From contig NIVC01001040.1 of the NCBI GenBank assembly GCA_002269645.1, positions 65,769 to 129,768 on the forward strand: a DNA stretch of 64,000 nucleotides. Direction: 5' to 3'. The stretch is from Macrostomum lignano. Lineage: Eukaryota. The notes under the pieces were generated by a model. The model ran no database searches, was not told the DNA's origin, and worked only from the letters and a program-made list of their open reading frames with translations. Position 1 is the first letter of the stretch, and every line of letters begins with the position of its first letter. Shown in pieces: positions 9,218 to 64,000 of the stretch. The position numbers and the translations under genes are program-made.

Positions 9218-9703
9218 TCACGATGAGGCACTCAGGAAGCTGTGCCGCAGCAGCTCCGCGGTGTCCGCTCGCTTCCTCGGGTCATAGTCTACGCACCTGA
9301 GGTAGAAGTCCTTCAGGCCAGCTGAGAACGCGTCTGCAATCCGAGGCATCGCCCGCCCTCCGCACCTCACGATGCCGATCCGGAACTGCTGAACGTTCGC
9401 GTCAGGAGGCTGCATGGCCGTCAGCTCATACACGGTGCAGCCGAAGGCCCACACGTCGGTCTTGGCTGAGTACGGAATCGAATCGCCCTCGCCCATGAAC
9501 AGCTCGGGCGCCATGAAGTAGGGGGTGCCTTTGGGATCGACGCCTGTGCTCAGGCCGCAGGTGCCGACGATCTCCTTGGCGAGACCGAAGTCGATCAGCT
9601 TGATGACGCCTTTGCTGGTGAGCATCGCATTGGAGCTCTTGATGTCGCGGTGCAAGATGGCGCCCTCCGGCTGGCAATGCAGGAAGTTCAGGCCTGAGCA
9701 GAT
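9218..9703 (-). CDS. ANK-kinase exon 4 (kinase C-lobe, to stop)
   Basis: Acceptor cacctgcag|ATC; ICSGLNFLH...HRDIKSSN...DFG...APE; 486 nt. Confidence 0.93.
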
Positions 9704-12700
9704 CTGCAGGTGGAGCAGTTTTGAGTAGTAAAGAAAGTGCATGAATTCACCCTCACTGATCCCACACTGATCCCACACTGATCTCACACTGATCCCACAC
9801 TGATCCCACACTGATCCCACACTGATCCCACACTGATCCCACACTGATCCACCCATGCCAGGCAATGCCAGAGAACTCAGAGACACACCTGTCTGGAGAA
9901 GTCCCTGACGCCGGACTCCTTGAACGGCTTTTTCTGACGCTGCATCAGCTCAAAGAGGCTGTGACCCGAGACAAGCTCGGTGAAGATGCACAGCCCATCC
10001 GACTTCTGCTCGCACTTGAGGAACTGCACAATGTTGGGATGCGAGAGTCGCTTGAGGATCTCAACTCCCCGCTTCTCCATCTCGACGGCTTTTTGCAGCT
10101 TCCCCGATTCGCCGGTGCCGCTCAGGGGCAGCACCTTGACAGCCACCGTCTGGTTGCGGTCTGTGAGGGCCTTGTACACCTCACCGAATCCGCCACGACC
10201 GATGAGCTGCTTCTTGTCTTTCTGCAGGATGAAGTCCCAGTCGGTGAAGCTGGGGTCCAGCTGCTTCTTGGCGCTGAAACATGAAATGAAGGAATTGATG
10301 AATTTTGTGTTGCTTGGGGCTTTCTGAGTACTTTGGAGTCACTCAGCCTTCTGCGTCACCAGCCTTCTGCGTCACCACCCTTCTGCGTCACCACCCTTCT
10401 GCGTCACCGCCCTTCTGCGTCACCAGCTTTCTGCTTCACCAGCCTTCTGCGTCACCACCCTTCTGCGTCACCACCCTTCTGCGTCACCACCCTTCTGCGT
10501 CACCACCCTTCTGCGTCAGCGCCCTTCTGCGTCACCACCCTTCTGCGTCACCACCCTTCTGCGTCACCACCCTTCTGCGTCACCACCCTTCTGCGTCACC
10601 ACCCTTCTGCGTCACCACCCTTCTGCGTCACCACCCTTCTGCGTCACCACCCTTCTGCGTCACCACCCTTCTGCGTCACCACCCTTCTGCGTCACCACCC
10701 TTCTGCGTCACCACCCTTCTGCGTCACCACCCTTCTGCGTCACCACCCTTCTGCGTCACCACCCTTCTGCGTCACCACCCTTCTGCGTCACCACCCTTCT
10801 GCGTCACCACCCTTCTGCGTCACCACCCTTCTGCGTCACCACCCTTCTGCGTCACCACCCTTCTGCGTCACCACCCTTCTGCGTCACCACCCTTCTGCGT
10901 CACCACCCTTCTGCGTCACCACCCTTCTGCGTCACCACCCTTCTGCGTCACCACCCTTCTGCGTCACCACCCTTCTGCGTCACCACCCTTCTGCGTCACC
11001 ACCCTTCTGCGTCACCACCCTTCTGCGTCACCACCCTTCTGCGTCACCACCCTTCTGCGTCACCACCCTTCTGCGTCACCACCCTTCTGCGTCACCACCC
11101 TTCTGCCATGAGCATCCTCGGGCGCCATGAAGTGCCAGGTGCCTTTTGGCTGGTTTTGCAGGACTGCAGGTTTTGACGAGTTCACCATCACCAACTGTCG
11201 CCTCATCATTTCTCACCGAGTCTCCTCAGGCAGTCCGACCGGAGTCGGCCCAGGCGGCTGGACGCTCTGTCGAGCTCGTGGGCGGGGACGCGGAGCTGCA
11301 GCGCTGTAGGAAGAGTTTTACGAGTGAGCCCGTTAAACATGTCTGGGTCGCCAAGACGGCACTTAAACTCTGCTAATGCTTCGTGTATAAAAAGCCTTGC
11401 AGATTGAGCTTTGGGTGGCGCTATGTGGACATTGGGGCGCGATCGGGAGATTGCGGCGCCACGAAGAGATTGGAGGCTCTCAAATCATTCAAGTGCCAAT
11501 ATTTTGAACATCACACCAAGTACATTCCTAATAAAATAGGAGAGTTTGAAACTTCGGAGAGTTTGATGGCACTTGAACTCGCTGATGCTTTGTGTTAAAA
11601 AACTGCAGATTGAGCTGTGGGTGGGGGGTTGGGGGCCCATGGGGAGATTAGGAGCGCCATGGGAAGTTTGGGGGCGCTTTGTGGAGATTAGAGGCGCCAT
11701 GGGGGGAGGTTGGGGGAGCCATGGGGAGATTAGAGGCGCCATGGGGAGATTGGAGGCGCCATAGGGAAATTGGAGGCGCCATGGGGAGATTGGAGGCGCC
11801 ATAGGGAAATTGAAAGCGCCATGGGGAGATTGGAGGCGCCATTGGGAGATTGGAGGCGCCATGGGGAGATTGGAGGCGCCATAGGGAAATTGGAAGCGCC
11901 ATGGGGAGATTGGAGGCGCCATTGGGAGATTGGAGGCGCCATGGGGAGATTGGAGGCGCCATAGGGAAATTGGAGGCGCCATGGGGAGATTATAGGCGCC
12001 ATGGGGAGATTGGAGGCGCCATAGGGAAATTGGAGGCGCCATGGGGAGATTGGAGGCGCCATGGGGAGATTGGAGGCGCCATGGGGAGATTGGAGGCGCC
12101 ATGGGGAAATTGGAGGCGCCATGGGGAGATTGGAGGCGCCATGGGGAGATTGGAGGCGCCATGGGGAGGTTGGAGGCGCCATGGGGAGGTTGGAGGCGCC
12201 ATGGGGAGGTTGGGGGCGCCATGGGGAGGTTGGGGGCGCCATGAGGAGCTGCACTGACAGATTCATGACGCCCTCGCTTGACTGCGGCGCTGCTGAGAAT
12301 TTCAGGGCGCCGATCATCAAAGCGCAATGAATTTTCGCCAAACAATATTTTCAGTATTTTCAGTGTCTGGCAGCAGTTCTCAGTCAGGACTCACCCAGCT
12401 GAGGCGGCAGTCGGCGCTGAGCTGCCAGCGGGAGGCCGAGAGGCTTCGAGCTGCCGCTGCGTGGAGGAAATCCAGGCCCGCTTTGCTGACTGGTCTCTAA
12501 AGTAGCAATAACTCTCAACATAATCAGCCGGTGTTTTGCCCTCGTTGTTCTTCAAGCCGAGCATTTCGGCTCCGATTTGGTCAAAAATGAACTGAAGAGA
12601 GTCGACTGGCTGCCACTGAGCGGCCAAATGGACGGCCGTGTCACCTCTAGAGTCAGGAACTGTGAGACAGTCGCTGCCGAGCTCCTTCACCAGCCACTCC

Positions 12701-13974
12701 AGATTTGAATTGTCAGACTTCTTAGCAGCAAAGTGAAATGCTGTTCTATCATCATCTCCCTTCAGCCGAAAGCAGTCAGTTCCGATCTGTCTCTTGATCC
12801 ACTCCAGCGACTCGATGCTCTGATGCTCAGCGGCCAAATGGACGGCCGTGTCACCTCTAGAGTCAGGAACTGTGAGACAGTCGCTGCCGAGCTCCTTCAC
12901 CAGCCACTTCAGATTTGAATTGTCAGACTTCTGAGCAGCAAAGTGAAATGCTGTTCTATCATCATCTCCCTTCAGCTGAAAGCAGTCAGTTCCGATCTGT
13001 CCCTTGATCCACTCCAGCGACTCGATGCCCTGATGCTGAGCGGCCAAATGGACGGCCGTGTTACCGCATTTGTCAGGAACTGTGAGACAGTCGCTGCCGA
13101 GCTCCTTCACCAGCCACTTCAGATTTGAATTGTCAGACTTCTGAGCAGCAATGTGAAATGCTGTTCTATTCCAAAACCCTCCCTTCAGCCGAAAGCAGTC
13201 AGTTCCGATCTGTCTCTTGATCCACTCCAGCGACTCGATGCCCTGATGCTGAGCGGCCAAATGGACGGCCGTGGTACCGTATTCGTTAGGAACTCTGAGA
13301 CAGTCGCTGCCGAGCTCCTTCACCAGCCACTTCAGCATTGAATTGTCCGACTTCTGAGCAGCAAAGTGAAATGCTGTTCTATCCCACAATCCCTTCAGCC
13401 GAAAGCAGTCAATTCCGATCCGTCTCTTGATCCACTCCAGCGACTCGATGCCCTGATGCTGAGCGACCAAATGGACGGCCGTGTCACCGAGTGAGTCAGG
13501 AACTGTGAGACAGTCGCTGCCGAGCTCCTTCACCAGCCACTTCAGACAAGAGTTGCTTTTTCTGTTCATAGCGGCAAAGTGAGCGAATGTCTTTTCCCAT
13601 GTACCGACAATTCTAAAGCAGCCTCTGCCTACCTTCTTTTTAACCAGCTCCATCCAAGACTCGTCCTGATGCTGGGCAGCCAAGTCCACTGGAGTCTCAC
13701 CTCCTAACAAAAAACTGCGATCATTTCTACGTGTCAGACAGTCGGGTCCGAATCTGTCAATCAGCAGCTCCAAGCACGACGAGCTCACCGGCTTGCAGGC
13801 CACGTGATGGGCCAGCGGCATTTTGCGAAGCTCTTCAAAGGGAAAGTCTATCTTGTCGAACCCGCCCACCTCCAGCTCGATGTTGCTGCCGACCTCACCG
13901 CACAGTCGCTGCAGCTCCTCGCTGTCTCCAGCCTCCAGCGCCGCTCTCAGCTTCCGCTCCATCTCTGTTGCCAT
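9218..13974 (-). CDS. Ankyrin-repeat plus STE/MAP3K-like Ser/Thr protein kinase, 4 coding exons, 845 aa
   Basis: join complement(9218..9703, 9889..10273, 11217..11303, 12395..13974) = 2538 nt. All introns are GT-AG with consistent phases 2, 2, 0. Kinase motifs [32 protein letters not shown] and DVWAFG are intact. The start codon (gtagccATGG) is inferred. Confidence 0.88.
9756..9850. repeat. 11-bp intronic tandem repeat (actgatcccac)
   Basis: Direct periodicity inside kinase intron 3. Confidence 0.9.
9889..10273 (-). CDS. ANK-kinase exon 3 (kinase N-lobe)
   Basis: Acceptor catgtttcag|C, donor CAG|gtgtgt; [23 protein letters not shown]...HPNIVQF; 385 nt. Confidence 0.93.
10345..11105. repeat. 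16-bp intronic minisatellite (ttctgcgtcaccaccc), ~47 copies
   Basis: Direct periodicity. Confidence 0.96.
11217..11303 (-). CDS. ANK-kinase exon 2 (Pro-rich linker [29 protein letters not shown])
   Basis: Acceptor ttcctacag, donor CG|gtgaga; 87 nt, symmetric phase 2-2, joins the ankyrin exon to the kinase in frame. Confidence 0.8.
11630..12245. repeat. 20-bp intronic minisatellite (ggcgccatggggagattgga), ~30 copies
   Basis: Direct periodicity. Confidence 0.95.
12395..13974 (-). CDS. ANK-kinase exon 1 (ankyrin-repeat array)
   Basis: Five ~70-aa (210-bp) modules, each with two ankyrin motifs (TAFHFAA and GxTAVHLAA), plus two degenerate N-terminal repeats; donor GG|gtgagt at 12394. Confidence 0.92.
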
Positions 13975-16868: not shown

Positions 16869-17595
16869 TGTTAGTTTCTGTAAAATAGAAAGAGAAGTAT
16901 TCGATAGTAGCTGATACTATCGAAAAAAGCCACAGAACTCTTAACGGTTCCTGGATATTGAAAAGCTCGGTGCAGCCAGCTGTGCTACTGCAAGTACTGA
17001 ATATGGCTCGCTTGACTGCAATCTGCATGAATTTGTGTCTGACTTTGCTGCCTTCACTTCACCCTGCTGTGGCACCTCATCAATGGCGCTTTGTGCTCAA
17101 ATGCAGTTTATTTATAAATTTATTAATAATTTTGCATTTTGTACTCACGGTTTATTTTGCTAATCTTTATACACAGTTCAGGTGTGCATTTTGTAATCCA
17201 CCTTTGATAATCTTTGGATTTATTTATCCGGTGCAACAGACTGACCCTGCTTCTACTCGCCCCGACCCTAGCCATCCAAGCAGCTCCAGACCAGCCGAGC
17301 TCAATGCCCAGAGGACAATGGCGAAGCTGAGGTTTAAGGGCCGAGCCGGCAGCCTGCGAACGCGTGTCAAAAGAAGGCTCGCTGCAAATGCTTTTTTAGG
17401 AGGGGGGGGGGTTGATGGCTGCCTAAAAGCGGCAAAGAGACAAGATGCGTGAGCGCCAACCCTGCCCCGCTCAAACCATTCACTGCTTTGCATTGCGCTT
17501 GTGCTCTCAGCTAAAATTTACTGCCTTTGATATTCGGCACTTCGTGTTTTCAGATGCGAGCCTCCCACTCATATTGGGCGTTTAGAATTAGGGAG

Positions 17596-20500: not shown

Positions 20501-23500
20501 GGCAGTATGAGCGACAGGCTGGGATGTAGGGTGAGGGGCAGTGAGGGAGACAGGCTGGGATGTAGGGTGAGGCGCGGGGAGATACAGGCTGGGATGTAGG
20601 GTGAGGGGCAGGGAGAGAAACAGGCTGGGATGTAGGGTGAGGGGCAGGGAGAGAGACCGGCTGGGATGTAGGGTGAGGGGCAGGGAGAGAGACAGGCTGG
20701 GATGCAGGGTGAGGGACAAGAAGAGATAGGCTGGGATGTAGGGTGAGGGGCAGGGAGGGAGACAGGCTGGGATGTAGGGTGAGGGGCAGGGAGAGAGACA
20801 GGCTTGGATGTAGGGTGAGGGGCAGGGAGAGAGACAGGCTGGGATGTAGAGTGAGGGGCAGGGAGAGAGACAGGCTGGGATGCAGGGTGAGGGACAAGAA
20901 GAGATAGGCTGGGATGCAGTGTGAGGGACAAGAAGAGATAGGCTGGGATGTAGGGTGAGGGGCAGGGAGGGAGAAAGGCTGGGATGTAGGGTGAGGGGCA
21001 GGGAGAGAGACAGGCTGGGATGTAGGGTGAGGGGCAGGGAGAGAGACAGGCTGGGATGTAGGGTGAGGGGCAGGGAGAGAGACAGGCTGGGATGCAGGGT
21101 GAGGGACAAGAAGAGATAGGCTGGGATGCAGGGTGAGGGACAAGAAGAGATAGGCTGGGATGTAGGGTGAGGGGCAGGGAGAGAGACAGGCTGGGATGTA
21201 GGGTGAGGGGCAGGGAGAGAGAAAGGCTGTGATGTAGGGTGAGGGGCAGTATGAGCGACAGGCTGGGATGTAGGGTGAGGGGCAGTGAGGGAGACAGGCT
21301 GGGATGTAGGGTGAGGCGCGGGGAGATACAGGCTGGGATGTAGGGTGAGGGGCAGGGAGAGAAACAGGCTGGGATGTAGGGTGAGGGGCAGGGAGAGAGA
21401 CCGGCTGGGATGTAGGGTGAGGGGCAGGGAGAGAGACAGGCTGGGATGCAGGGTGAGGGACAAGAAGAGATAGGCTGGGATGTAGGGTGAGGGGCAGGGA
21501 GAGAGACAGGCTGGGATGTAGGGTGAGGGGCAGGGAGGGAGACAGGCTGGGATCTAGGGTGAGGGGCAGGGAGAGAGACAGGCTGGGATGTAGAGTGAGG
21601 GGCAGGGAGAGAGACAGGCTGGGATGCAGGGTGAGGGACAAGAAGAGATAGGCTGGGATGCAGTGTGAGGGACAAGAAGAGATAGGCTGGGATGTAGGGT
21701 GAGGGGCAGGGAGGGAGAAAGGCTGGGATGTAGGGTGAGGGGCAGGGAGAGAGACAGGCTGGGATGTAGGGTGAGGGGCAGGGAGAGAGACAGGCTGGGA
21801 TGTAGGGTAAGGGGCAGGGAGAGAGACAGGCTGGGATGCAGGGTGAGGGACAAGAAGAGATAGGCTGGGATGTAGGGTGAGGGGCAGGGAGGGAGACAGG
21901 CTGGGATGTAGGGTGAGGGGCAGGGAGAGAGACAGGCTTGGATGTAGGGTGAGGGGCAGGGAGAGAGACAGGCTGGGATGTAGGGTAAGGGGCAGGGAGA
22001 GAGACAGGCTGGGATGCAGGGTGAGGGACAAGAAGAGATAGGCTGGGATGTAGGGTGAGGGGCAGGGAGGGAGACAGGCTGGGATGTAGGGTGAGGGGCA
22101 GGGAGAGAGACAGGCTTGGATGTAGGGTGAGGGGCAGGGAGAGAGACAGGCTGGGATGTAGAGTGAGGGGCAGGGAGAGAGACAGGCTGGGATGCAGGGT
22201 GAGGGACAAGAAGAGATAGGCTGGGATGCAGTGTGAGGGACAAGAAGAGATAGGCTGGGATGTAGGGTGAGGGGCAGGGAGGGAGAAAGGCTGGGATGTA
22301 GGGTGAGGGGCAGGGAGAGAGACAGGCTGGGATGTAGGGTGAGGGGCAGGGAGAGAGACAGGCTGGGATGTAGGGTGAGGGGCAGGGAGAGAGACAGGCT
22401 GGGATGCAGGGTGAGGGACAAGAAGAGATAGGCTGGGATGCAGGGTGAGGGACAAGAAGAGATAGGCTGGGATGTAGGGTGAGGGGCAGGGAGAGAGACA
22501 GGCTGGGATGTAGGGTGAGGGGCAGGGAGAGAGAAAGGCTGTGATGTAGGGTGAGGGCAGTATGAGCGACAGGCTGGGATGTAGGGTGAGGGGCAGTGAG
22601 GGAGACAGGCTGGGATGTAGGGTGAGGCGCGGGGAGATACAGGCTGGGATGTAGGGTGAGGGGCAGGGAGAGAAACAGGCTGGGATGTAGGGTGAGGGGC
22701 AGGGAGAGAGACCGGCTGGGATGTAGGGTGAGGGGCAGGGAGAGAGACAGGCTGGGATGCAGGGTGAGGGACAAGAAGAGATAGGCTGGGATGTAGGGTG
22801 AGGGGCAGGGAGAGAGACAGGCTGGGATGTAGGGTGAGGGGCAGGGAGGGAGACAGGCTGGGATCTAGGGTGAGGGGCAGGGAGAGAGACAGGCTGGGAT
22901 GTAGAGTGAGGGGCAGGGAGAGAGACAGGCTGGGATGCAGGGTGAGGGACAAGAAGAGATAGGCTGGGATGCAGTGTGAGGGACAAGAAGAGATAGGCTG
23001 GGATGTAGGGTGAGGGGCAGGGAGGGAGAAAGGCTGGGATGTAGGGTGAGGGGCAGGGAGAGAGACAGGCTGGGATGTAGGGTGAGGGGCAGGGAGGGAG
23101 ACAGGCTGGGATCTAGGGTGAGGGGCAGGGAGAGAGACAGGCTGGGATGTAGAGTGAGGGGCAGGGAGAGAGACAGGCTGGGATGCAGGGTGAGGGACAA
23201 GAAGAGATAGGCTGGGATGCAGTGTGAGGGACAAGAAGAGATAGGCTGGGATGTAGGGTGAGGGGCAGGGAGGGAGAAAGGCTGGGATGTAGGGTGAGGG
23301 GCAGGGAGAGAGACAGGCTGGGATGTAGGGTGAGGGGCAGGGAGAGAGACAGGCTGGGATGTAGGGTGAGGGCAGGGAGAGAGACAGGCTGGGATGTAGG
23401 GTGAGGGGCAGGGAGAGAGAAAGGCTGGGATGTAGGGTGAGGGGCAGGGAGAGAGAAAGGCTGGGATGTAGGGTGAGGGGCAGGGAGAGAGACAGGCTGG

Positions 23501-23558
23501 GATTTAGGGTGAGGAGCAGGGAGAGAGACAGGCTGAGATGTAGGGTGAGAGGCAGGGC
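17596..23558. repeat. 36-bp G-rich minisatellite (gggcagggagagagacaggctgggatgtagggtgag), ~165 copies with higher-order variant blocks
   Basis: Direct periodicity; gives the RGRERDRLGCRV repeat ORFs. Confidence 0.97.
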
Positions 23559-23952
23559 TGGCAAAATACCTTCCAAAATACCTTCAAAATCGCCAATAAA
23601 ACAGCTGCCATCAATCCAATCACTTCATGACTTCATAACTTGCATCACTTCTTGGCTTTCGTAGGCATATAGTCGTTCAGTTCAAAAATAGTTTTAAATC
23701 TCCGCAAACAATATCGCTTACAATACGCTACTCATAGTACTCATAAGAATACCATTTGCCGTTAAAGAGAAGAGCAGCTAGATGGATTTTTTCCAGAAAT
23801 TCGTTTGCACCTGAAGATTCGCTTTGCTGGAGTTTTTTACTCAAAAGCGAATGACAAAACTCTTACACTGCCGTGAGTCGTGCCTCGGCTCTCGGGGTGG
23901 GCGCTCAGTTTTTGAATTTTCCAGCGTCTCCGATGCACCTCACTCTGCATCT

Positions 23953-25213
<1,261 letters not shown>

Positions 25214-25959
25214 CTGCCCAGCTTGTGTTTTGTTGCGCACCTGTAAGAATTCAATTTTATTGCACACTCGAGTCCGCCTCTCCATCGGTTTCATTGTCCG
25301 CATTTGGCTTGTAAAAAACTGGCTTCTCAAGCAGCTGATTGCATTTTATAGCAAATGCTCGCTCAGCTCGAGTTTTGTTTAGCTGCGAGCTTGAGCAGTC
25401 CTGCTCACAGGGCTCTCTTCGCCAGCTGCATGAGCACGCATATCAACTGACAGAATTCAGCAATCCACCCTCGCTTTGGCCCACTGATGTTCCACACTTC
25501 TTTATATTTTTGCCTCCAAGAAGTCCAAAAGCAACAGCCAATCAGATTTTGTTGCCGATGCGCAGATTTTTAGTGGCGATAAAAGTGAAAATTGAATACT
25601 GATTTATTATTTCGAAAACGTTGGACTAACCTTAGAAAATGAGAAACAGTCCATCACAGGCGCGTGTGGTTGGTGCTGACTCACACAGCCATCCTTCAGG
25701 TAGCTGACTGCTCACACAGTCAGTGCAATTACATGTACATTATTTATCCGGTGCAACACACTGACTCAGCAGTTCAGCATTAATAATCTAGTTTTTCATC
25801 TGCATTGCTCAAATAAAAGTATTGCTGTTTCAATGTTTCTGCCAGATCACCAATGGATGACAATGCAGAGCAGCAAATGTAAAGTATGTGCATTTGAGCA
25901 TAAAGTTCTCGGCTGGTGTTTGTCTTTGCTGTTTTGTTCGTGGTTTGGAATCTCAGATT

Positions 25960-32579: not shown

Positions 32580-34652
32580 AGAGACAGGCTGGGATGAAGG
32601 GTGAGCGGCAGGGAGGGAGACAGGCTGGGATGTAGGGTGAGGGGCAGGGAGGGAGACAGGCTGGGATGTAGGGTGAGGGGCAGGGAGAGAGACAGGCTGG
32701 GATGAAGGGTGAGGGGCAGGGAGGGAGACAGGCTGGGATGTAGGGTGAGGGGCAGGGAGGGAGACAGGCTGGGATGTAGGGTGAGGGGCAGGGAGGGAGA
32801 CAGGCTGGGATGTAGGGTGAGGGGCAGGGAGAGAGACAGGCTGGGATGAAGGGTGAGGGGCAGGGAGGGAGACAGGCTGGGATGTAGGGTGAGGGGCAGG
32901 GAGGGAGACAGGCTGGGATGTAGGGTGAGGGGCAGGGAGAGAGACAAGCTGGTATGTAGGGTGAGGGACAGTATGAGAGACAGGCTGGGATGTAGGGTGA
33001 GGGACAGTATGAGAGACAGGCTGGGATGTAGGGTGAGGGGCGGGGAGATACAGGCTGGGATGTAGGGTGAGGGGCAGGGAGATACAGGCTGGGATGTAGG
33101 GTGAGGGGCAGGGAGAGAGACAGGCTGGGATGTAGGGTGAGGGGCAGGGAGAGAGACAGGCTCGGATGTAGGGTGAGGGGCGGGGAGAGAGACAGGCTGG
33201 GATGTAGGGTGAGGGGCAGAGAGGGAGACAGGCTGGGATGTAGGGTGAGGGGCAGGGAGAGAGACAGGCTGGGATGTAGAGTGAGGGGCAGGGAGAGAGA
33301 CAGGCTGGGATGCAGGGTGAGGGACAAGAAGAGATAGGCTGGGATGCAGTGTGAGGGACAAGAAGAGATAGGCTGGGATGTAGGGTGAGGGGCAGGGAGG
33401 GAGAAAGGCTGGGATGTAGGGTGAGGGGCAGGGAGAGAGACAGGCTGGGATGTAGGGTGAGGGGCAGGGAGAGAGACAGGCTGGGATGTAGGGTAAGGGG
33501 CAGGGAGAGAGACAGGCTGGGATGCAGGGTGAGGGACAAGAAGAGATAGGCTGGGATGCAGGGTGAGGGACAAGAAGAGATAGGCTGGGATGTAGGGTGA
33601 GGGGCAGGGAGAGAGACAGGCTGGGATGTAGGGTGAGGGGCAGGGAGAGAGACAGGCTGGGATGTAGAGTGAGGGGCAGGGAGAGAGACAGGCTGGGATG
33701 TAGGGTGAGGGACAAGAAGAGATAGGCTGGGATGTAGGGTGAGGAGCAGGGAGGGAGACAGGCTGGGATTTAGGGTGAGGGGCAGGGAGAGAGACAGGCT
33801 GGGATTTAGGGTGAGAGGCAGGGAGAGAGACAGGCTGGGATGTAGGGTGAGGGGCAGGGAGAGAGACAGGCTGGGATTTAGGGTGAGAGGCAGGGAGAGA
33901 GACAGGCTGGGATGTAGGGTGAGGGGCAGGGAGAGAGACAGGCTGGGATGTAGGGTGAGGGGCAGGAAGGGAGACAGGCTGGGATGTAGGGTGAGGGGCA
34001 GGGAGGGAGACAGGCTGGGATGTAGGGTGAGGGGCAGGGAGGGAGACAGGCTGGGATGCAGGGTGAGGGACAGGGAGAGAGACAGGCTGGGATGTAGGGT
34101 GAGGGACAGGGAGAGAGACAGGCTGGGATGTAGGGTGAGGGGCAGGGAGAGAGACAGGCTGGGATGTAGGGTGAGCGGCAGGGAGAGAGACAGGCTGGGA
34201 TGTAGGGTGAGGGGCAGGAAGGGAGACAGGCTGGGATGTAGGGTGAGGGGCAGGGAGAGAGACAGGCTGGGATGCAGGGTGAGGGACAGGGAGAGAGACA
34301 GGCTGGGATGTAGGGTGAGGGACAGGGAGAGAGACAGGCTGGGATGTAGGGTGAGGGACAGGGAGAGAGACAGGCTGGGATGTAGGGTGAGGGGCAGGGA
34401 GAGAGACAGGCTGGGATGCAGGGTGAGGGGCAGGAAGGGAGACAGGCTGGGATGTAGGGTGAGGGGCAGGGAGGGAGACAGGCTGGGATGTAGGGTGAGG
34501 GGCAGGGAGAGAGACAGGCTGGGATGTAGGGTGAGGGGCAGGAAGGGAGACAGGCTGGGATGTAGGGTGAGGGACAGGGAGAGAGACAGGCTGGGATGCA
34601 GGGTGAGGGGCAGAGAGGGAGACAGGCTGGGATGTAGGGTGAGGGGCAGGGT
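32580..34652. repeat. Second array of the 36-bp G-rich minisatellite, ~57 copies
   Basis: Same unit as 17596-23558. Confidence 0.96.
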
Positions 34653-36410: not shown

Positions 36411-36749
36411 ATGTAGATCATAGACAATCATGATCACAACTCGTACATGTAGGGTAGCTGTGAAGAATCGGTCATAAACAGTACATGAATTCAACGATCA
36501 AAATTAACAATAGCATGAAGCCTACGAACCCCTTTTACCTTCTATTCTACGCCCTTTCCCCTGATCTTACCCTCACCAGAATCTCACCCGAGTTTCACCA
36601 GAATCTCACAAAGATGGGGACAAAGCGACATGACATGCATGAATTAATAATTCTCCGATGTACGCCTGCATGCAGCCTACCAGAAAATTATGATAACTTT
36701 GCTGGATATGAGAGGGTAGAGAGAAGAGTAAAGAAGACTGTCATATCAA

Positions 36750-38560
36750 ACAGGAAATTCCCGTGTCTAACAGGAGACTCCCATGTCTAACAGGAGACTC
36801 CCATGTCTAACAGGAGACTCCCATGTCTAACAGGAGACTCCCATGTCTAACAGGAGACTCCCATGTCTAACAGGAGACTCTCATGTCTAACAGGAGACTC
36901 CCATGTCTAACAGGAGACTCTCATGTCTAACAGGAGACTCCCATGTCTAACAGAAGACTCCCATGTTTAACAGGAGACTCCCATGTCTAACAGGAGACTC
37001 CCATGTCTAACAGGAGACTCCCATGTCTAACAGGAGACTGCCATGTCTAACAGGAGACTCCCATGTCTAACAGGAGACTCCCATGTCTAACAGGAGACTC
37101 CCATGTCTAGCAGGAGACTCCCATGTCTAACAGGAGACTGCCATGTCTAACAGGAGACTGCCATGTCTAACAGGAGACTCCCATGTCTAACAAGAGACTC
37201 CCATGTCTAACAGGAGACTCCCATGTCTAACAGGAGACTCCCATGTCTAACAGGAGACTCCCATGTCTAACAGGAGACTCTCATGTCTAACAGGAGACTG
37301 CTATGTCTAACAGGAGACTCCCATGTCTAACAGGAGACTCCCATGTCTAACAGGAGACTCCCATGTCTAACAGGAGACTCCCATGTCTAACAGGAGACTC
37401 CCATGTCTAACAGGAGACTCCCATGTCTAACAGGAGACTGCCATGTCTAACAGGAGACTGCCATGTCTAACAGGAGACTCCCATGTCTAACAGGAGACTC
37501 CCATGTCTAACAGGAGACTGCCATGTCTAACAGGAGACTCCCATGTCTAACAAGAGGCTCCCATGTCTAACAGGAGACTCCCATGTCTAACAGGAGACTC
37601 CCATGTCTAACAGGAGACTCCCATGTCTAACAGGAGACTCTCATGTCTAACAGGAGACTCCCATGTCTAACAGGAGACTCCCATGTCTAACAGGAGACTC
37701 CCATGTCTAACAGGAGACTCCCATGTCTAGCAGGAGACTCCCGATCCCATGTCTAACAGGAGACTCCCATGTCTAACAGGAGACTCCCATGTCTAACAGG
37801 AGACTCCCATGTCTAAAGGAGACTCCCATGTCTAACAGGAGACTCCCATGTCTAACAGGAGACTGCCATGTCTAACAGGAGACTCCCATGTCTAACAGGA
37901 GACTCCCATGTCTAACAGGAGACTCCCATGTCTAACAGGAGACTGCCATGTCTAACAGGAGACTCCCATGTCTAACAAGAGGCTCCCATGTCTAACAGGA
38001 GACTCTCATGTCTAACAGGAGACTCCCATGTCTAACAGGAGACTCCCATGTCCAACAGGAGACTCCCATGTCTAACAGGAGACTCCCATGTCTAACAGGA
38101 GACTCCCATGTCTAACAGGAGACTCCCATGTCTAACAGGAGACTCCCATGTCTAACAGGAGACTCCCATGTCTAACAGGAGACTCCCATGTCTAACAGGA
38201 GACTCCCATGTCTAACAGGAGACTCCCATGTCTAGCAGGAGACTCCTGATCCCATGTCTAACAGGAGACTGCCATGTCTAACAGGAGACTCCCATGTCTA
38301 ACAGGAGACTCCCATGTCTAACAGGAGACTCCCATGTCTAACAGGAGACTCCCATGTCTAACAGGAGACTCCCATGTCTAACAGGAGACTCCCATGTCTA
38401 ACAGGAGACTCCCATGTCTAACAGGAGACTCCCATGTCTAACAGGAGACTCCCATGTCTAACAGGAGACTCTCATGTCTAACAGGAGACTCCCATGTCTA
38501 ACAGGAGACTCCCATGTCTAACAGGAGACTCCCATGTCTAACAGGACACCATGTCTAACA
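36750..38560. repeat. 20-bp minisatellite (aacaggagactcccatgtct), ~90 copies
   Basis: Same unit as 6770-7120. Confidence 0.96.
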
Positions 38561-38980
38561 GCAAGAGTGTGCATTCAGTTTAAAACCATACTCTGCTATC
38601 TAGAGTAGTCTCAAAAGTGTTTTCCCACCAAATTCGGTCCAAACAAAAGCAGAAATGCGGTTCTATTCTCATTTTCCTGCTCAAAACAGCGGCTGAGGTG
38701 GCTGAGCAGCCCTCATGCCCGCCATTGTCTCAGTTCAATGCAATGCGAAGCCACTGCAAACACTTATTTATGTACATTTCACAGCGCACTGAGTGAGCAC
38801 AGACTCAAGTGTCTGCCAGCATCATTGATGCAGCATCAGCTGTTCAAAAGAGATGCACAGAATGGCTGATGCTCGTTTGAACACACTTTTGTGCAGATGA
38901 AGCAACAAGCAGCACCACCCAGCCTCCAGGTGAGCACATTGCTCATCTGTCCACAGACTCTCCGTGCTCGAGTCTCCCCC

Positions 38981-39864: not shown

Positions 39865-40410
39865 AGCCGGATAAACAAAATGCCCAATCGGATAAACAAA
39901 ATGGGCAATCGGATAAACAAAATGGGCAATCAGATGAACAAAAACGGCAATCGGATAAACAAAAAGGGCAATCGGATAAACAAAAAGGGCAATCAAATAA
40001 ACAAAAAGGTCAATCGGATAAACAAAAAGGACAATCGGATAAACAAAAAAGGGCAATCAGATAAACAAAAAGTTCAATCGGATAAACAAAAAGGGCAATC
40101 AAATAAACAAAAAGGGCAATCAGATAAACAAAAAAGGGCAATCAGATAAACAAAAAGGTCAATCGGATAAACAAAAAGGGCAATCAAATAAACAAAAAGG
40201 GCAATCAGATAAACAAAAAAGGGCAATCAGATAAACAAAAAGGTCAATCGGATAAACAAAAAGGGCAATCGGATAAACAAAAAGAGCAATCGGATAAACA
40301 AAAAGAGCAATCGAATAAACAAAAAGGTCAATCAGATAAACAGAAAGGGCAATCGAATAAACAAAAAGGCAATCAGATAAACAAAAAGAGCAATCAGATA
40401 AACAAAAAAC
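39865..40410. repeat. 21-bp minisatellite, ~26 copies
   Basis: Same unit as 8665-9140. Confidence 0.93.
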
Positions 40411-41634
40411 ATCACCAAGCAAAACCGGCCGCTCCAAGAGCCGCTCCGCTCCCTCACAGCCCATCGCTCTCGCAGTCAGGATGAGGCACTCAGGAAGCTG
40501 TGCCGCAGCAGCTCCGCGGTGTCCGCTCGCTTCCTCGGGTCATAGTCTACGCACCTGAGGTAGAAGTCCTTCAGGCCGGCTGAGAACCCGTCCGCAATCC
40601 GAGGCATCTTCTGCTTTCTAAACCGCAGAATGCCAATATTTTCAATTGGCTGGTCTCCATCAGGAGGCTGCATGGCCGTCAGCTCATACACGGTGCAGCC
40701 GAAGGCCCACACGTCGGTCTTGGCTGAGTACAGAAGTGATTTCAATTTTGTGTCGAACAGCTCCGGAGCCATGAAGTACATGGTACCTTTTGGTCCGAAG
40801 CCTGTGCTAAGACCGCAGGTCTTCTCAATCTCCTTGGCCAGACCGAAGTCGATCAGCTTGATGACGCCCTCGTTGGTGAGCATAATATTGGAGCTCTTAA
40901 TGTCACGGTGCAAGATAGCGCCCTCCGGCTGGCAGTGCAGAAAGTTCAGGCCTGAGCAGATCTGCAGGAGCAGTTTTGAGCAGTCATGAGACCCCATACC
41001 TGCTCCCACCCACACTGATCCCACACTAATCCCACACTGATCCCACACTGATCCCACACTGATCCCACACTGATCCCACACTGATCCCACACAGATCCCA
41101 CGCTGATCCCACACTGATCCCACACTAATCCCACATCCCACCCATGCCAGGCAATGCCAGAGAACTCAGACACGCACCTGTCTGGAGAAGTCCCTGACCC
41201 CGGACTCCTTGAACGGCTTTTTTTGACGCTGCATCAGCTCAAAGAGGCTGTGACCCGAGACCAGCTCGGTGAAGATGTACAGCCCATCCGACTTCTGCTC
41301 GCACTTGAGGAACTGCAGGATGTTGGGATGCGAGAGTCGCTTGAGGATCTCAACTCCCCGCTTCTCCATCTCGACGGCTCTCTGCAGCTTCCCCGATTGG
41401 CCGGTGCCGCTCAGGGGCAGCACCTTGACAGCCACCGTCTGGTTGCGGTCTGTGAGGGCCTTGTACACCTCACCGAATCCGCCACGGCCGATGAGCTGCT
41501 TCTTGTCGTCCTGCAGAATGAAGTCCCAGTCGGTGAAGCTGGGGTCCAGCTGCTTCTTGGCGCTGAAACATGAAATGAAGGAATTGATGAATTTTGTGTT
41601 GCTTGGGGCTTTCTGAGTACTTTGGAGTCACTCA

Positions 41635-42690: not shown

Positions 42691-44314
42691 GGAGCTGCAC
42701 TGACAGATTCATGACGCCCTCGCTTGACTGCTGCGCTGCTGAGAATTTCAGGGCGCCGATCATCAAAGCGCAATGAATTTTCGCCAAACAATATTTTCAG
42801 TATTTTCAGTGTCAGGCAGCAGCTCTCAGTCAAGACTCACCCAGCTGAGGCGGCAGTCGGCGCTGAGCTGCCAGCAGGAGGCCGAGAGGCTTCGAGCCGC
42901 CGCTGCGTAAAGGAAATCCAGGCCCGCTTTTCTGACTGGTCTCGATAGCGATAACTCTCAACATAATCAGCCAGTGTTTCGCCCTTGTTGTTCTTCAAGC
43001 TGAACATTTCGGCTCCGATTTGGTCAAAAATGAACTGAAGAGAGCCGACTGGCTGCAACTGAGCGGCCAAATGGACGGCCGTGTTCCCGTATTCGTCAGG
43101 AACTGTGAGACAGTCGCTGCCGAGCTCCTTCACCAGCCACTTCAGATTTGAATTGTCAGACTTCTGAGCAGCAAAGTGAAATGCTGTTCCATCATCATCT
43201 CCCTTCAGCTGAAAGCAGTCAGTTCCGATCTGTCCCTTGATCCACTCCAGCGACTCGATGCCCTGATGCTCAGCGGCCAAATGGACGGCCGTGTTACCGC
43301 ATTTGTCAGGAACTGTGAGACAGTCGCTGCCGAGCTCCTTCACCAGCCACTTCAGCTTTGAATTGTCAGACTCCTCAGCAGCAAAGTGAAATGCCGTTTT
43401 ATCCAACCATCCCTTCAGCCGAAAGCAGTCAGTTCCGATCTGTCTCTTGATCCACTCCAGCGACTCGATGCCCTGATGCCAAGCAGCCAAATGGACGGCC
43501 GTGGTACCGTATCTGAGTTATGCTGAGTTAAACAATGAGAGCTGACTGTGGCTGCGTGCTCGGCATAGCAAGTGCATTGCCAGTGGGCAGGGGTGAAGGG
43601 GCGGCAGCTGAGACACGAGGGGAGAGAGATGGAGGGGGGAGGGAGGGCAGGGCTGAGGCCTGGAAACCAAGCGGAGCTCTCTGACGATTTTCAATTCAGT
43701 TTGCAATTGTATGGCAAAAATTTTGCAGAAAAATGCTTATAACTGAGGATTTTTTGTTGCTGAACTCGAAACAGATGGAGAATGGTCGCTTGGGTTTGCC
43801 AGCGACACTTTAAGTCAGTATCTAACAGGTGACGTCAGTATCTAACAGGTGACATCAGTGTCTAACATGTCACTCTAGTATCTAACAGGTGACGTCAGTA
43901 TCTAACAGGTGACACCAGTATCTAACAGGTGACATCAGTATCTAACAGGTGACATCAGTATCAAAAAGGTGACATCAGTATCTAACAGGTGACATCGATA
44001 TCTAACAGGTGACATAAGTGTCTCACAGCTGACATCAGTATCTAATACGTGACTTCTTTATCTAACAGGTGACGTCAGTATCTAACAGGTGACGTCAGTA
44101 TCTAACAGGTGACATCAGTATCATACAAGTGACATCAGTATCTAACAGGCGATATCGGTATCAAACACGTGACACCATTATCTAACAGGTGACATCAGTA
44201 TCTAACAGGTGACATCAGTATCATACAAGTGACATCAGTATCTAACAGGCGATATCGGTATCAAACACGTGACACCATTATCTAACAGGTGACATCAGTA
44301 TCTAACAGGTGACA

Positions 44315-47485: not shown

Positions 47486-48031
47486 TCAACGCTTGACTTC
47501 AAACTTGACGTCTTTGCACTCGTTGATTGTTTCGCAAGAATCTAAAATAGAAAAAAATGTCAGTAAAGATATCTGGATTGTGAAATATTTTATTTGAAAC
47601 TTTCTATTTGGTAGAGAAGGAACAGCTTCTTACCAGCAGTGCAGCAGATGCCTCTGGAAGCGCAGCGACCCTTGCCTCCCAGACAGACGGTGGCGACGCG
47701 ACCGCAGCCAAGGACTTTCGCTGGCAGACGGCGACACGCGGCGGTGTCCGGGCCGAAGCCGACGCGATATCCGCCGTGGGGGTGACAGCAGATGGCGCGG
47801 CCGAAACAGCGGCCCCAGCCGTGGGAGCAGCTCAGGCAGGGACCGTTGATGGTATTGGTTGCCGGTACATGACTGCCTGCGGGTTTGAAGTTATGGTAGA
47901 CTTTAAAATACCTGTGTTTGGATTCGGCGTGCCGTTACATTAATTTGAGGTTCAAGGCCCAGGGCTGGCTGGCCATCTCAAAATGCCCACAGTGTGCATA
48001 CTGTTGTAGCACAGTGGTACAGCGTCGGACT
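47486..48031 (-). pseudogene. Prohormone pseudogene: neurophysin exons only; exon 1 (signal peptide and hormone) deleted
   Basis: Exon 2 (47634..47876) and exon 3 (47486..47541) are present. A 668-bp deletion joins at 48029-48031, and there is a conserved Cys to Tyr change (TGT to TAT). Confidence 0.9.
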
Positions 48032-48525: not shown

Positions 48526-49055
48526 TGCTGTGGCACCTCATCAATGGCGCTTTGTGCTCAAATGCAGTTTATTTATAAATTTATTAATAATTTTGCATTT
48601 TGTACTCACGGTTTATTTTGCTAATCTTTATACACAGTTCAGGTGTGCATTTTGTAATCCACCTTTGATAATCTTTGGATTTATTTATCCGGTGCAACAG
48701 ACTGACCCTGCTTCTACTCGCCCCGACCCTAGCCATCCAAGCAGCTCCAGACCAGCCGAGCTCAATGCCTAGAGGACAATGGCGAAGCTGAGGTTTAAGG
48801 GCCGAGCCGGCAGCCTGCGAACGCGTGTCAAAAGAAGACTCGCTGCAAATGCTTTTTTAGGAGGGGGGGGGGTTGATGGCTGCCTAAAAGCGGCACAGAG
48901 ACAAGATGCGTGAGCGCTAACCCTGCCCCGCTCAAACAATTCACTGCTTTGCATTGCGCTTGTGCTCTCAGCAAAAATTTACTGCCTTTGATATTCGGCA
49001 CTTCGTGTTTTCAGATGCGAGCCTCCCACTCATATTGGGCGTTTAGAATTAGGGA

Positions 49056-50208
49056 GAGGGGCAGGGAGAGACAGGCTGGGATGTAGGGTGAGGGGCAGGG
49101 AGAGACAGGCTCGGATGTAGGGTGAGGGGCAGGGAGAGAAAGGCTGGGATGTAGGGTGAGGGGCAGGGAGAGAGACAGGCTGGGATGTAGGGTGAGGGGC
49201 ACGGAGAGAGAAAGGCTGGGATGTAGGGTGAGGGCAGGGAGAGAGACAGGCTGGGATGTAGGGTGAGGGGCAGGGAGGGAGACAGGCTGGGATGTAGGGT
49301 GAGGGGCAGGGAGAGAGACAGGCTGGGATGTAGGGTGAGGGGCAGGGAGAGAGACAGGCTGGGATGTAGGGTGAGGGCAGGGAGAGAGACAGGCTGGGAT
49401 GTAGGGTGAGGGCAGGGAGAGAGACAGGCTGGGATGTAGGGTGAGGGGCAGGGAGAGAGAAAGGCTGGGATGTAGGGTGAGGGGCAGGGAGAGAGAAAGG
49501 CTGGGATGTAGGGTGAGAAGCAGGGAGGGAGACAGGCTGGGATGTAGGGTGAGGGGCAGGGAGAGAGACAGGCTGGGATGTAGGGTGAGGGGCAGGGAGA
49601 GAGACAGGCTGGGATGTAGGGTGAGGGGCAGGGAGAGAGACAGGCTGGGATGTAGGGTGAGGGACAAGAAGAGATAGGCTGGGATGTAGGGTGAGAAGCA
49701 GGGAGGGAGAAAGGCTGGGATGTAGGGTGAGGGGCAGGGAGAGAGACAGGCTGGGATGTAGGGTGAGGGGCAGGGAGAGAGAAAGGCTGGGATGTAGGGT
49801 GAGGGGCACGGAGAGAGAAAGGCTGGGATGTAGGGTGAGAAGCAAGGAGAGAGACAGGCTGGGATGTAGGGTGAGGGGCAGGGAGAGAGACAGGCTGGGA
49901 TGTAGGGTGAGAAGCAAGGAGAGAGACAGGCTGGGATGTAGGGTGAGGGGCAGGGAGAGAGACAGGCTGGGATGTAGGGTGAGGGGCAGGGAGAGAGACA
50001 GGCTGGGATGTAGGGTGAGGGGCAGGGAGAGAGACAGGCTGGGATGTAGGGTGAGAGGCAGGGAGGGAGACAGGCTGGGATGTAGGGTGAGGGGCAGGGA
50101 GAGAGAAAGGCTGGGATGTAGGGTGAGGGCAGGGAGAGAGACAGGCTGGGATGTAGGGTGAGGGGCAGGGAGAGAGACAGGCTGAGATGTAGGGTGAGAG
50201 GCAGGGCT
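49056..50208. repeat. 36-bp G-rich minisatellite, ~32 copies
   Basis: Counterpart of 17596-23558. Confidence 0.95.
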
Positions 50209-63800: not shown

Positions 63801-64000
63801 CATGTCTAACAGGAGACTCCCATGTCTAACAGGAGACTCCCATGTCTAACAGGAGACTCCCATGTCTAACAGGAGACTCCCATGTCTAACAGGAGACTCC
63901 CATGTCTAACAGGAGACTCCCATGTCTAAGGAGACTCCCATGTCTAGCAGGAGACTCCCATCCCATGTCTAACAGGAGACTGCCATGTCTAACAGGAGAC
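60821..64000. repeat. Start of segmental duplication unit C, with 29-bp (~25 copies, 60821-61540), 30-bp (61736-62400) and 20-bp (62740-64000, >60 copies) arrays
   Basis: Unique spacers are nearly identical to the start of unit B. Confidence 0.92.

What the first reader, a model, noticed from the sequence alone, without database searches (positions are those of the whole stretch)
40476..40961. Kinase paralogs diverge in sharp patches on substrate-recognition surfaces
Seen: about 29 of 161 residues differ in the C-lobe exon, versus about 5 of 128 in the N-lobe exon. Changes cluster without indels in the activation segment (IVGT...GVDPKGTP to IEKT...GFGPKGTM), the post-APE loop (MGEGDSIP to DTKLKSLL) and the alphaG region (ANVQQFR..VRCGGRA to GDQPIEN..LRFRKQK). 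Catalytic motifs and both exon ends are identical. Established: these segments form the P+1 pocket and substrate-docking face. Inference: diversifying selection or patchwork gene conversion from other family members, so both input (ankyrin) and output (substrate) ends are variable.
Basis: partly seen in the sequence, partly recalled or inferred. Interest (0 to 1): 0.75.

Follow-up and report, generated by a model that had tools for sequence, protein, structure and literature searches.

The report
Flatworm kinase paralogs with hypervariable surface patches
Two neighbouring copies of a flatworm-specific ankyrin-repeat protein kinase are almost identical except for a few sharp patches on the face that meets the substrate; these patches are old, freely evolving islands in a gene family otherwise kept uniform by copying between members, a known pattern seen here in an undescribed family.

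Summary
The window comes from Macrostomum lignano. It holds two tandem minus-strand paralogs, 31 kb apart, of a lineage-specific ankyrin-repeat plus STE-like kinase family. Their last exons (A 40476-40961, B 9218-9703) differ at 29 of 161 residues with no indel. The N-lobe exons differ at 5 of 128. The differences cluster far beyond chance, in the beta7-beta8 turn, activation loop, P+1 residue, alphaEF-alphaF loop and alphaG region. I fetched eight more paralogs with DNA. The same columns are the variable ones across the family, and all ten exons are exactly 486 nt.

- **Mosaic ancestry or gene conversion: strongly supported.** The PHI test gives P=0.009 and Rmin is 14 within 486 nt. Silent divergence between A and the others is 0.54 in the patches against 0.20 in the scaffold. 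Other contigs show kb-scale B-A-B mosaics.
- **Diversifying selection: not shown.** dN/dS in the patches is about 1.0-1.2 (CI 0.6-2.3), against 0.19 in the scaffold.

Relaxed constraint therefore remains a live alternative. I rate this a new member of a known kind, of moderate interest.

The parts
40476..40961 (-). Copy A, last coding exon: kinase C-lobe, 161 codons plus TGA. This is the finding itself.
   Evidence: It is 100% identical to the same exon in L001 and L003.
40869..40886 (-). Patch 1, codons 25-30 (IMLTNE in A, AMLTSK in B): beta7 strand and beta7-beta8 turn, just after the catalytic loop
40779..40826 (-). Activation-segment zone, codons 45-60. It holds patches EK/VG (40821-40826) and FG/VD (40794-40799) and the P+1 residue M/P (40779-40781). 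Dense silent differences lie between them.
40731..40754 (-). Patch 4, codons 69-76 (DTKLKSLL in A, MGEGDSIP in B): alphaEF-alphaF loop directly after APE. 16 of 24 nt differ.
40608..40658 (-). Patch 5, codons 101-117 ([17 protein letters not shown] in [18 protein letters not shown] in B): pre-alphaG loop, alphaG helix and start of the alphaG-alphaH loop. 29 of 51 nt differ.
40968..41012 (-). Last ~45 nt of intron 2 of copy A, a strongly divergent non-coding patch. A's version is shared with L006 and L007, whose exons are B-type.
41178..41562 (-). Copy A, N-lobe exon (128 codons; 5 aa differences from B)
42841..43517 (-). Copy A, exon 1 as it stands in this window: only about 3 double-ankyrin units. 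A stop lies just upstream, and there is no N-terminal region and no ATG. It is truncated relative to B and to L003.
9218..9703 (-). Copy B, last coding exon (kinase C-lobe, majority 'B-type' patches)
9889..10273 (-). Copy B, N-lobe exon
12395..13974 (-). Copy B, exon 1: ATG at 13974, N-terminal region and about 7 double-ankyrin units (527 aa)

Best explanation
The two genes belong to a Macrostomum lignano-specific multigene family. Each gene has three coding exons: an N-terminal region plus a variable number of 70-aa double-ankyrin units, a kinase N-lobe exon, and a kinase C-lobe exon. All catalytic residues are kept, so the kinases look active, and they resemble the STE group. The family sits in tandem segmental duplications of 26-31 kb. 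Its members repeatedly exchange sequence by gene conversion or unequal recombination, in tracts from tens of bases to kilobases. This keeps a 'scaffold' nearly uniform, and that scaffold is also under strong purifying selection (dN/dS 0.19). Five or six short segments escape both the homogenisation and the constraint: the beta7-beta8 turn, the activation loop, the P+1 residue, the alphaEF-alphaF loop, and alphaG with its flanking loops. Together they form the peptide-binding and protein-docking face of the C-lobe. They keep their length but change residues at about the neutral rate. The A-type and B-type exons carry patch lineages that separated long ago; both silent and replacement sites are saturated there (about 0.54). 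Their scaffolds have been made similar more recently. Shown here: the mosaic structure, the uneven silent divergence, the family-wide hypervariability of the same columns, and dN/dS values of about 1 and 0.19. Inferred: the islands persist because copies with different substrate or partner specificity are kept by selection, so the family is a set of kinases with one catalytic core, different outputs, and different ankyrin inputs.
For: Organism and family: P0001-P0036 and P0129-P0146 are all M. lignano. The next best hits are plant MAP3Ks at 36-38% identity. Pkinase E=7e-57, plus Ank repeats. The PDB neighbours are STK25, MST4, STK24, SLK and ASK1. Clustering P<1e-5.
Family-wide: columns that differ between A and B carry 2.57 states in other close paralogs against 1.40 elsewhere, P=3e-9. 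The same holds in distant subfamilies, P=1e-7. All ten C-lobe exons with DNA are exactly 486 nt.
Selection: dN/dS on eight independent paralogs is about 1.0-1.2 in the patches and 0.19 in the scaffold, and the N:S counts differ with P=2e-4.
Mosaicism within the exon: PHI P=0.0086, 230 of 496 site pairs are incompatible, and Rmin=14. L008 and L010 share the TGGC (WH) tract but differ around it. L010 and L011 share a tract at nt 65-93.
Mosaicism beyond the exon: A shares its intron-2 end with L006 and L007, which have B-type exons. L001 is B-like on both flanks (100% identity over 1.5 kb), yet it carries the A state at nearly all sites that tell A from B across ~2.2 kb around the kinase exons.
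Age heterogeneity: for A against the others, pS is 0.20 in the scaffold and 0.535 in the patches. Among the non-A copies it is 0.115 and 0.133. Silent differences at identical-residue codons number 4 of 7 inside patches against 17 of 120 outside, P=0.014. Between A and B there are no silent differences in codons 77-99 or 128-159.
Mutation spectrum: A's 53 private changes (45 in patch codons) have the same GC-to-AT bias as private changes in other copies, 31:7 against 45:11. This points to ordinary mutation accumulated over a longer time.
Against: dN/dS in the patches cannot be told apart from 1, so selection for different specificities is inferred, not shown. Loops of this kind are the least conserved parts of most kinases. 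Only ten of more than 30 family members have DNA available here, and no donor for A's patches was found. Four-gamete failures can also come from recurrent mutation. The kb-scale mosaics rest on long-read contigs of a highly repetitive, hidden-polyploid genome and could in part be assembly or haplotype effects. Some 'paralogs' may be homeologs or alleles. There is no expression or biochemical evidence. In this window copy A lacks its start codon and N-terminal part.
Confidence: 0.55

Rival explanations
1. Same mosaic family, but the patches are simply unconstrained surface loops that drift. Nothing maintains them and the copies are functionally redundant. The sharpness is only contrast against a scaffold kept uniform by purifying selection and conversion.
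For: Patch dN/dS is about 1 (CI 0.63-2.3). Silent and replacement rates in the patches are equal (0.43 and 0.42 per site). A's private changes follow the general AT-biased mutation spectrum. In distant subfamilies the same loops also take 1-2 codon indels. These regions are the least conserved of kinase C-lobes in general (my own knowledge).
Against: Loop lengths are strictly kept in all ten close paralogs. Conserved residues are embedded in the patches (PKGT, IGI, R). One variable site is the P+1 residue, next to the conserved GT of the P+1 loop, where the solved STE20-type kinases that align best carry GTPFWMAPE. If conversion were free to act, neutral islands as short as 6-50 nt should be erased along with their flanks. 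No stop or frameshift occurs in any copy.
Confidence: 0.33
2. Recent tandem duplication followed by strong positive selection on point mutations in the patches, with no role for gene conversion.
For: A and B share 96-100% identity in the intron, UTR and flanks. The replacement changes are concentrated on a functional surface.
Against: Silent sites in and near the patches are also strongly diverged. A non-coding patch at the intron end is equally diverged and is shared with other paralogs. A-like patch variants exist in other genes (P0131, P0146, P0022), so the type predates the A/B pair. Recombination tests are positive.
Confidence: 0.05
3. Copy A is a decaying pseudogene, or the patches are sequencing or assembly chimeras.
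For: In this window A's exon 1 has lost the ATG, the N-terminal region and several ankyrin units. The genome is very repeat-rich.
Against: The A-type exon is intact. Its scaffold has zero replacement changes against B. It is identical in two other contigs, where it belongs to full-length genes (L001; L003, which encodes P0136 of 699 aa). It also appears in independent UniProt gene models. There are no frameshifts or stops.
Confidence: 0.04

Closest known systems
Tandem multigene families with hypervariable recognition surfaces plus inter-paralog gene conversion. Examples are plant NLR and receptor-kinase clusters such as RPP8 (10.1101/694240) and the Arabidopsis OAK receptor-like kinase cluster (PMC3136440). 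MHC class II and primate opsin or RHD/RHCE pairs are cited from my own knowledge.
   Same: Tandem paralogs, frequent sequence exchange, a uniform scaffold, and sharp islands of divergence on the ligand-facing or substrate-facing surface.
   Different: Here the variable surface is the substrate-docking face of a cytoplasmic kinase domain, not an LRR or a peptide groove. dN/dS in the islands is about 1, not clearly above 1. The host is a free-living flatworm and the biological role is unknown.
Fast-evolving lineage-specific kinase expansions: the Plasmodium falciparum FIKK family (PMC12137140) and the Toxoplasma ROP5/ROP18 tandem polymorphic (pseudo)kinases (PMC4546408). These are named only; no sequences were fetched.
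   Same: Rapid expansion of one kinase type, conserved catalytic core, and divergence concentrated on specificity-determining surfaces. ROP5 is also a tandem array.
   Different: Those are secreted parasite effectors acting on host proteins. This family has no signal of export, carries an N-terminal ankyrin array, belongs to a free-living animal, and shows fine-scale mosaicism.
STE-group kinases (GCK-III STE20s STK24/25/MST4, SLK; MAP3K5/ASK1; plant MAPKKKs)
   Same: Best sequence matches (E about 1e-35 in PDB; plant MAP3Ks at 36-38% identity). An HRDIKxxN catalytic loop and a GT..FMAPE P+1 motif are present.
   Different: Only about 30-38% identical. It has its own ankyrin N-terminus, a 2-residue longer activation loop and a 4-residue longer post-APE loop. 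No orthologue was found outside Macrostomum in the databases searched.
Platyhelminth ankyrin-prodomain caspases (PMC11463336)
   Same: An M. lignano protein (P0150) joins an ankyrin module 44% identical to this family's module to a Peptidase_C14 domain. The paper also notes an M. lignano caspase with a kinase-like prodomain.
   Different: The effector domain is a kinase, not a caspase. Whether the two act in one pathway is unknown.

Membership tests
Eukaryotic protein kinase superfamily (Pfam PF00069), catalytically competent | Significant match to the Pkinase profile over the whole domain | tested here: met
   E=7.2e-57, 193 bits, profile positions 3-263 of 263
Eukaryotic protein kinase superfamily (Pfam PF00069), catalytically competent | Gly-rich loop, VAVK lysine, alphaC glutamate, HRD...N catalytic loop, DFG, APE, alphaF aspartate | tested here: met
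   [29 protein letters not shown] and DVWAFG are present in A and B. The corresponding columns are invariant in a 24-sequence alignment.
STE group (STE20 / STE11-MAP3K) | Closest relatives by sequence are STE-group kinases | tested here: met
   The top PDB matches are STK25, MST4, STK24, SLK and MAP3K5. NEK, PKR, TAO and PAK follow. The top non-flatworm database hits are annotated STE11 MAP3K.
STE group (STE20 / STE11-MAP3K) | Placement inside a named STE family by phylogeny, with orthologues in other animals | tested here: inconclusive
   No tree was built. Identity to any named family is only 30-38%, and no non-Macrostomum orthologue appeared in two database searches.
Multigene family under concerted evolution with hypervariable regions | Statistical evidence of recombination or gene conversion among paralogs | tested here: met
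   PHI P=0.0086; Rmin=14; 230 of 496 site pairs incompatible. The L001 locus is a B-A-B mosaic.
Multigene family under concerted evolution with hypervariable regions | Variation concentrated in the same discrete segments in all members | tested here: met
   2.57 against 1.40 states per column, P=3e-9. N:S ratio in patches against scaffold, P=2e-4.
Multigene family under concerted evolution with hypervariable regions | dN/dS significantly above 1 in the hypervariable segments (diversifying selection) | tested here: not met
   dN/dS is 1.09-1.17, bootstrap CI 0.63-2.5. No likelihood site models could be run, and only ten sequences were available.
Known ankyrin-repeat kinases (ILK, TNNI3K, RIPK4/ANKK1, DAPK) | Kinase domain homologous to those families | tested here: not met
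   None of them is among the 60 best PDB sequence matches. The resemblance is in domain architecture only.

The most novel reading that the evidence does not exclude
The family is a germline-encoded repertoire. Short variant 'cassettes' for the activation loop, P+1 site, post-APE loop and alphaG are shuffled among tandem copies by micro gene conversion. This would generate many kinases with one catalytic core and different substrate or partner specificities. They are coupled to a variable ankyrin sensor module that the flatworm also attaches to a caspase and to a second kinase type. On this reading it is an innate-immune, cell-death or conflict-driven recognition system built on kinases.
Probability: 0.12. 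Interest if true: 0.8.

Novelty: new member of a known kind. Interest (0 to 1): 0.42.

Why it matters
If the patches set substrate or partner choice, this family offers a natural series of near-isogenic kinases. They differ only at the activation segment, P+1 site, post-APE loop and alphaG, which makes them a ready-made experiment on how these surfaces encode specificity. The family is also a clear animal example of islands of divergence persisting inside genes that otherwise evolve in concert. The shared ankyrin module on kinases and a caspase hints at an unexplored signalling or cell-death system in flatworms. If the patches are merely unconstrained loops, the finding is an ordinary feature of a young, repeat-rich gene family.

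Tried and rejected
- **Bacterial-style reading of the window.** I dropped this at once. The sequence is eukaryotic, with canonical introns and massive minisatellites.
- **Targeted hypermutation (DGR-like adenine mutagenesis or deaminase-type C-to-T).** Rejected. The patch differences include all substitution classes, and A's private changes have the same spectrum as those in other copies.
- **GC-biased gene conversion as the driver of B-type patches.** Considered because A's patches are 42% GC against 66% in B. The simpler account is AT-biased mutation accumulating in A's old segments.
- **Donor search.** I looked for A's patch sequences in the window and eleven fetched loci. None was found other than the identical copies in L001 and L003.
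- **First homologue search.** It returned mostly UniProt-only fragments without DNA, and cluster look-up gave no contigs. The DNA-bearing NCBI members came only from a second search with exon 1.
- **Pfam scan of raw translated intergenic DNA.** It failed because of stop codons and was replaced by tblastn.
- **Literature.** A search for the gene identifier and for this family found nothing specific.
- **Likelihood site models and GARD.** They are not available in the tool set. I used counting methods that do not need a single tree instead.

Full report
**What is at the coordinates.** Positions 40476-40961, read on the minus strand, form an open 161-codon exon ending in TGA. It encodes the C-lobe of a protein kinase: ICSGLNFLH...HRDIKSSN...DFG...APE...DVWAFG...DPRKRA. 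It is preceded by a cag acceptor. A 216-nt intron made largely of an 11-nt repeat lies upstream, and beyond it the N-lobe exon (41178-41562) ends in CAG|gtgcgt. Further upstream is an ankyrin-repeat exon (about 42841-43517). Pfam gives Pkinase E=7e-57 for the joined kinase exons and Ank families for the upstream exon. [quoted passage not shown] About 35 close relatives were found, all from that species. The next best matches are plant STE11-type MAP3Ks at 36-38% identity. The nearest solved structures are the STE20-type kinases STK25, MST4, STK24 and SLK, and MAP3K5.

**The paralog and the observation.** The window holds about 2.3 copies of a 26-31 kb tandem segmental duplication packed with minisatellites. 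The only other copy of the exon is at 9218-9703 on the same strand.
- Aligned without gaps, 29 of 161 residues and 80 of 486 nt differ.
- The N-lobe exons differ at 5 of 128 residues.
One further patch was not listed: IMLTNE/AMLTSK, right after the catalytic loop.
- The clustering is far beyond chance: 23 runs against 48.5 expected, and 18 adjacent differing pairs against 5.0. No permutation out of 100,000 reached either observed value.

An AlphaFold2 model built on a 24-sequence alignment (pLDDT 87, pTM 0.88) places the patches as follows:
- the beta7-beta8 turn;
- the activation loop, two places;
- the residue after the conserved GT of the P+1 loop;
- the alphaEF-alphaF loop directly after APE;
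- a 17-codon stretch covering the loop before alphaG, alphaG itself, and the start of the alphaG-alphaH loop.

**Not an artefact, not a pseudogene.** The A-type exon is 100% identical in two NCBI contigs of assembly GCA_002269645.1: L001 on NIVC01000558.1 and L003 on NIVC01001041.1. It also appears in independently predicted UniProt proteins (P0007, P0011, P0014). Copy B is matched by P0124. In this window copy A's first exon is truncated. A stop codon precedes the open frame at 43517, and the N-terminal region, the ATG and several ankyrin units are absent. L003 is otherwise 100% identical to unit A, but it has a complete first exon and encodes a 699-aa protein, P0136. The truncation is therefore a structural variant or an assembly difference, and the A-type kinase belongs to intact genes. 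Copy B is complete: ATG at 13974, 527 aa of N-terminal region plus about seven double-ankyrin units, then the two kinase exons.

**The same places vary across the family.** In an alignment of about 20 close paralogs the scaffold is almost invariant, for example [24 protein letters not shown]. The patches take several forms:
- a majority B type;
- an A type with relatives (P0131 and P0146: DTEVHSLP, GDRPSES..RFRKQN; P0022; P0013);
- an FNT/NQ/WH type.

Columns that differ between A and B carry 2.57 residue states in the other close paralogs against 1.40 elsewhere (P=3e-9). The same holds in distant subfamilies (P=1e-7), where these loops also take 1-2 codon indels. Variation is therefore not uniform.

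**More DNA.** A second search, using copy B's first exon, found full-length NCBI members with contigs. I fetched nine further loci. This gave ten distinct C-lobe exons (A, B, L004-L011). All are exactly 486 nt.

**Selection.** To avoid circularity I defined the patches from A/B only and counted changes in the eight other paralogs. I used a per-codon minimum-spanning-tree count, which does not assume a single genealogy.
- Patch codons: 0.43 silent and 0.42 replacement changes per site. dN/dS is about 1.0-1.2, bootstrap CI 0.63-2.3.
- Scaffold codons: 0.43 silent and 0.08 replacement changes per site. dN/dS is 0.19, CI 0.11-0.32.
- The N:S counts differ between the two classes with P=2e-4.

The patches evolve at about the neutral rate while the scaffold is strongly constrained. 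dN/dS above 1 is not shown. Nor is it clearly below 1.

**Mosaic ancestry within the exon.** Between A and B the background divergence in the intron, 3' UTR and flanks is mostly 0-6% per 50 nt, but it reaches 54% in patch 5.
- Nei-Gojobori estimates give pS 0.58 and pN 0.56 in the patch codons. The scaffold gives pS 0.19 and pN 0.
- Path averaging can inflate pS in multi-hit codons, so I also counted silent differences only at codons encoding the same residue: 4 of 7 inside patches against 17 of 120 outside (P=0.014).
- Silent differences lie within five codons of a replacement in 16 of 59 cases, against 5 of 68 further away (P=0.004). There are none in codons 77-99 or 128-159.
- For A against each of the nine others, pS is 0.20 in the scaffold and 0.535 in the patches. 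Among the nine it is 0.115 and 0.133.
- A carries 53 private nucleotides, 45 of them in the 23% of codons that are patches.
- Their GC-to-AT bias (31:7) matches that of private changes in the other copies (45:11). They look like ordinary mutations accumulated over a longer time. They do not look like targeted mutagenesis or import from a compositionally distinct donor.
- The last ~45 nt of intron 2 are as diverged as the coding patches. A's version there is shared with L006 and L007, whose exons are B-type.

**Formal and direct evidence of exchange.** Among the ten exons, 230 of 496 pairs of biallelic informative sites show all four combinations. Hudson-Kaplan Rmin is 14 within 486 nt, and the PHI test gives P=0.0086. 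Individual tracts are visible in the alignment:
- L008 and L010 share the identical TGGC change (PY to WH) but have different activation loops around it.
- L010 and L011 share a tract at nt 65-93, including a silent change, and differ elsewhere.

Protein-level recombinants also exist. P0141 combines an FNT-like activation loop with a B-type alphaG, and P0139 combines VGT/VD with WH.

On a larger scale, locus L001 matches unit B on both sides. The downstream match is 100% over 1.5 kb, and the upstream side carries B-specific sequence. Yet L001 carries the A state at nearly all sites that distinguish A from B across ~2.2 kb around the kinase exons. On that contig the neighbouring gene P0133, which sits at the position of unit A, has a B-type kinase. 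The two kinase types are thus swapped relative to the window. These kb-scale mosaics could in part reflect haplotypes or long-read assembly of near-identical repeats. The fine-scale exon mosaic does not depend on them.

**Best account.** The family evolves in concert through frequent conversion or unequal recombination between tandem and dispersed members, with strong purifying selection on the catalytic scaffold. A handful of short segments on the substrate-facing side of the C-lobe are exempt from both. They keep their length but change residues at the neutral rate, and deep lineages of them (A-like, B, FNT-like) persist and are reshuffled. The A/B contrast looks sharp because the two copies carry different old patch lineages on a recently homogenised scaffold.

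I infer, but have not shown, that the islands persist because selection keeps copies with different substrate or partner specificity. Three points favour this:
- Islands of 6-50 nt should otherwise be erased together with their flanks.
- Loop lengths and embedded residues are conserved.
- One variable site is the P+1 residue.

The main rival is that the loops are simply unconstrained.

**Comparison with known systems.** The pattern is that of tandem recognition-gene families with gene conversion and hypervariable surfaces. Examples are the plant RPP8 and OAK clusters (10.1101/694240, PMC3136440) and, from my own knowledge, MHC and the opsin or RHD/RHCE islands of divergence. It also resembles fast-evolving kinase expansions such as FIKK (PMC12137140) and ROP5/ROP18 (PMC4546408); these are named only. 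It differs in host, in lacking a shown dN/dS above 1, and in the ankyrin input module. That module is also found joined to a caspase domain (P0150) and to a quite different kinase type (P0129, P0155). This recalls the flatworm ankyrin-prodomain caspases described in PMC11463336. I found no paper describing this kinase family.

**Verdict.** This is a new member of a known kind of system, of moderate interest.

Noticed in passing
window 43515-43517 and 42841-43517, compared with L003 9690-11250: Copy A's first exon is cut short in this window: there is no ATG, no N-terminal region, and only about 3 double-ankyrin units. NCBI contig NIVC01001041.1 is otherwise 100% identical and carries about 1.5 kb more, encoding a full 699-aa protein. 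This is either a structural variant or an assembly collapse of the 210-bp ankyrin repeat.
   Followed up: partly
window 47593-47934 (-) and 15812-16153 (-); L001 6640-7080: Each duplication unit carries, upstream of the kinase gene and on the same strand, a cysteine-rich exon. It belongs to a gene annotated with a neurophysin (Hormone_5) domain in the NCBI contig. The unit-A copy has a Cys-to-Tyr change (HGGYRVGF) that unit B and L001 lack.
   Followed up: partly
L001 and L005 (NIVC01000558.1, about 270-322 kb) compared with window units A and B: On that contig the gene at unit A's position (P0133) has a B-type kinase, and the gene at unit B's position (P0001) has an A-type kinase. This is the reverse of the window. 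L001 is a B-A-B mosaic with a ~2.2 kb A-like tract.
   Followed up: yes
proteins P0150, P0129, P0155, P0158 (not in the window): The family's ankyrin module also occurs fused to a caspase domain (P0150, 44% identity). With 79-92% identity it occurs fused to a clearly different kinase domain (P0129 and relatives). One input module is thus combined with several effector domains.
   Followed up: partly
N-lobe exon, residues about 50-66 (window A about 41365-41415); L008 7565-7952: A further variable patch lies in the beta3-alphaC loop and the start of alphaC. L008/P0139, P0008 and P0022 carry SQAEQDAEELK... or SHARQAAGKLK... in place of SGTGQSGKLQK..., with a one-codon insertion in L008.
   Followed up: no
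window 40963-41177 and 9704-9888; intron 2 in L004-L011: The intron between the two kinase exons is mostly an 11-nt tandem repeat (GTGGGATCAGT). Its copy number varies, so the intron ranges from 130 to 769 nt among paralogs.
   Followed up: partly
whole window, for example 17589-23557, 32580-34651, 49050-50206, 59002-60140 (36-nt unit); 23950-25215 ((TC)n); 36749-38561 and 62739-64000 (20-nt unit); 39868-40408 (21-nt unit about 65 nt after copy A's stop): Much of the window is long minisatellite arrays. The same repeat families recur in each duplication unit with different copy numbers. One 36-nt array spans 6 kb, and a pure TC dinucleotide run spans 1.3 kb.
   Followed up: no
C-lobe exon codons 77-160 against 0-76 in ten paralogs: Silent diversity in the scaffold is almost three times lower in the 3' half of the exon (0.235 per site) than in the 5' half (0.66 per site). 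This suggests stronger or more recent homogenisation towards the 3' end.
   Followed up: partly
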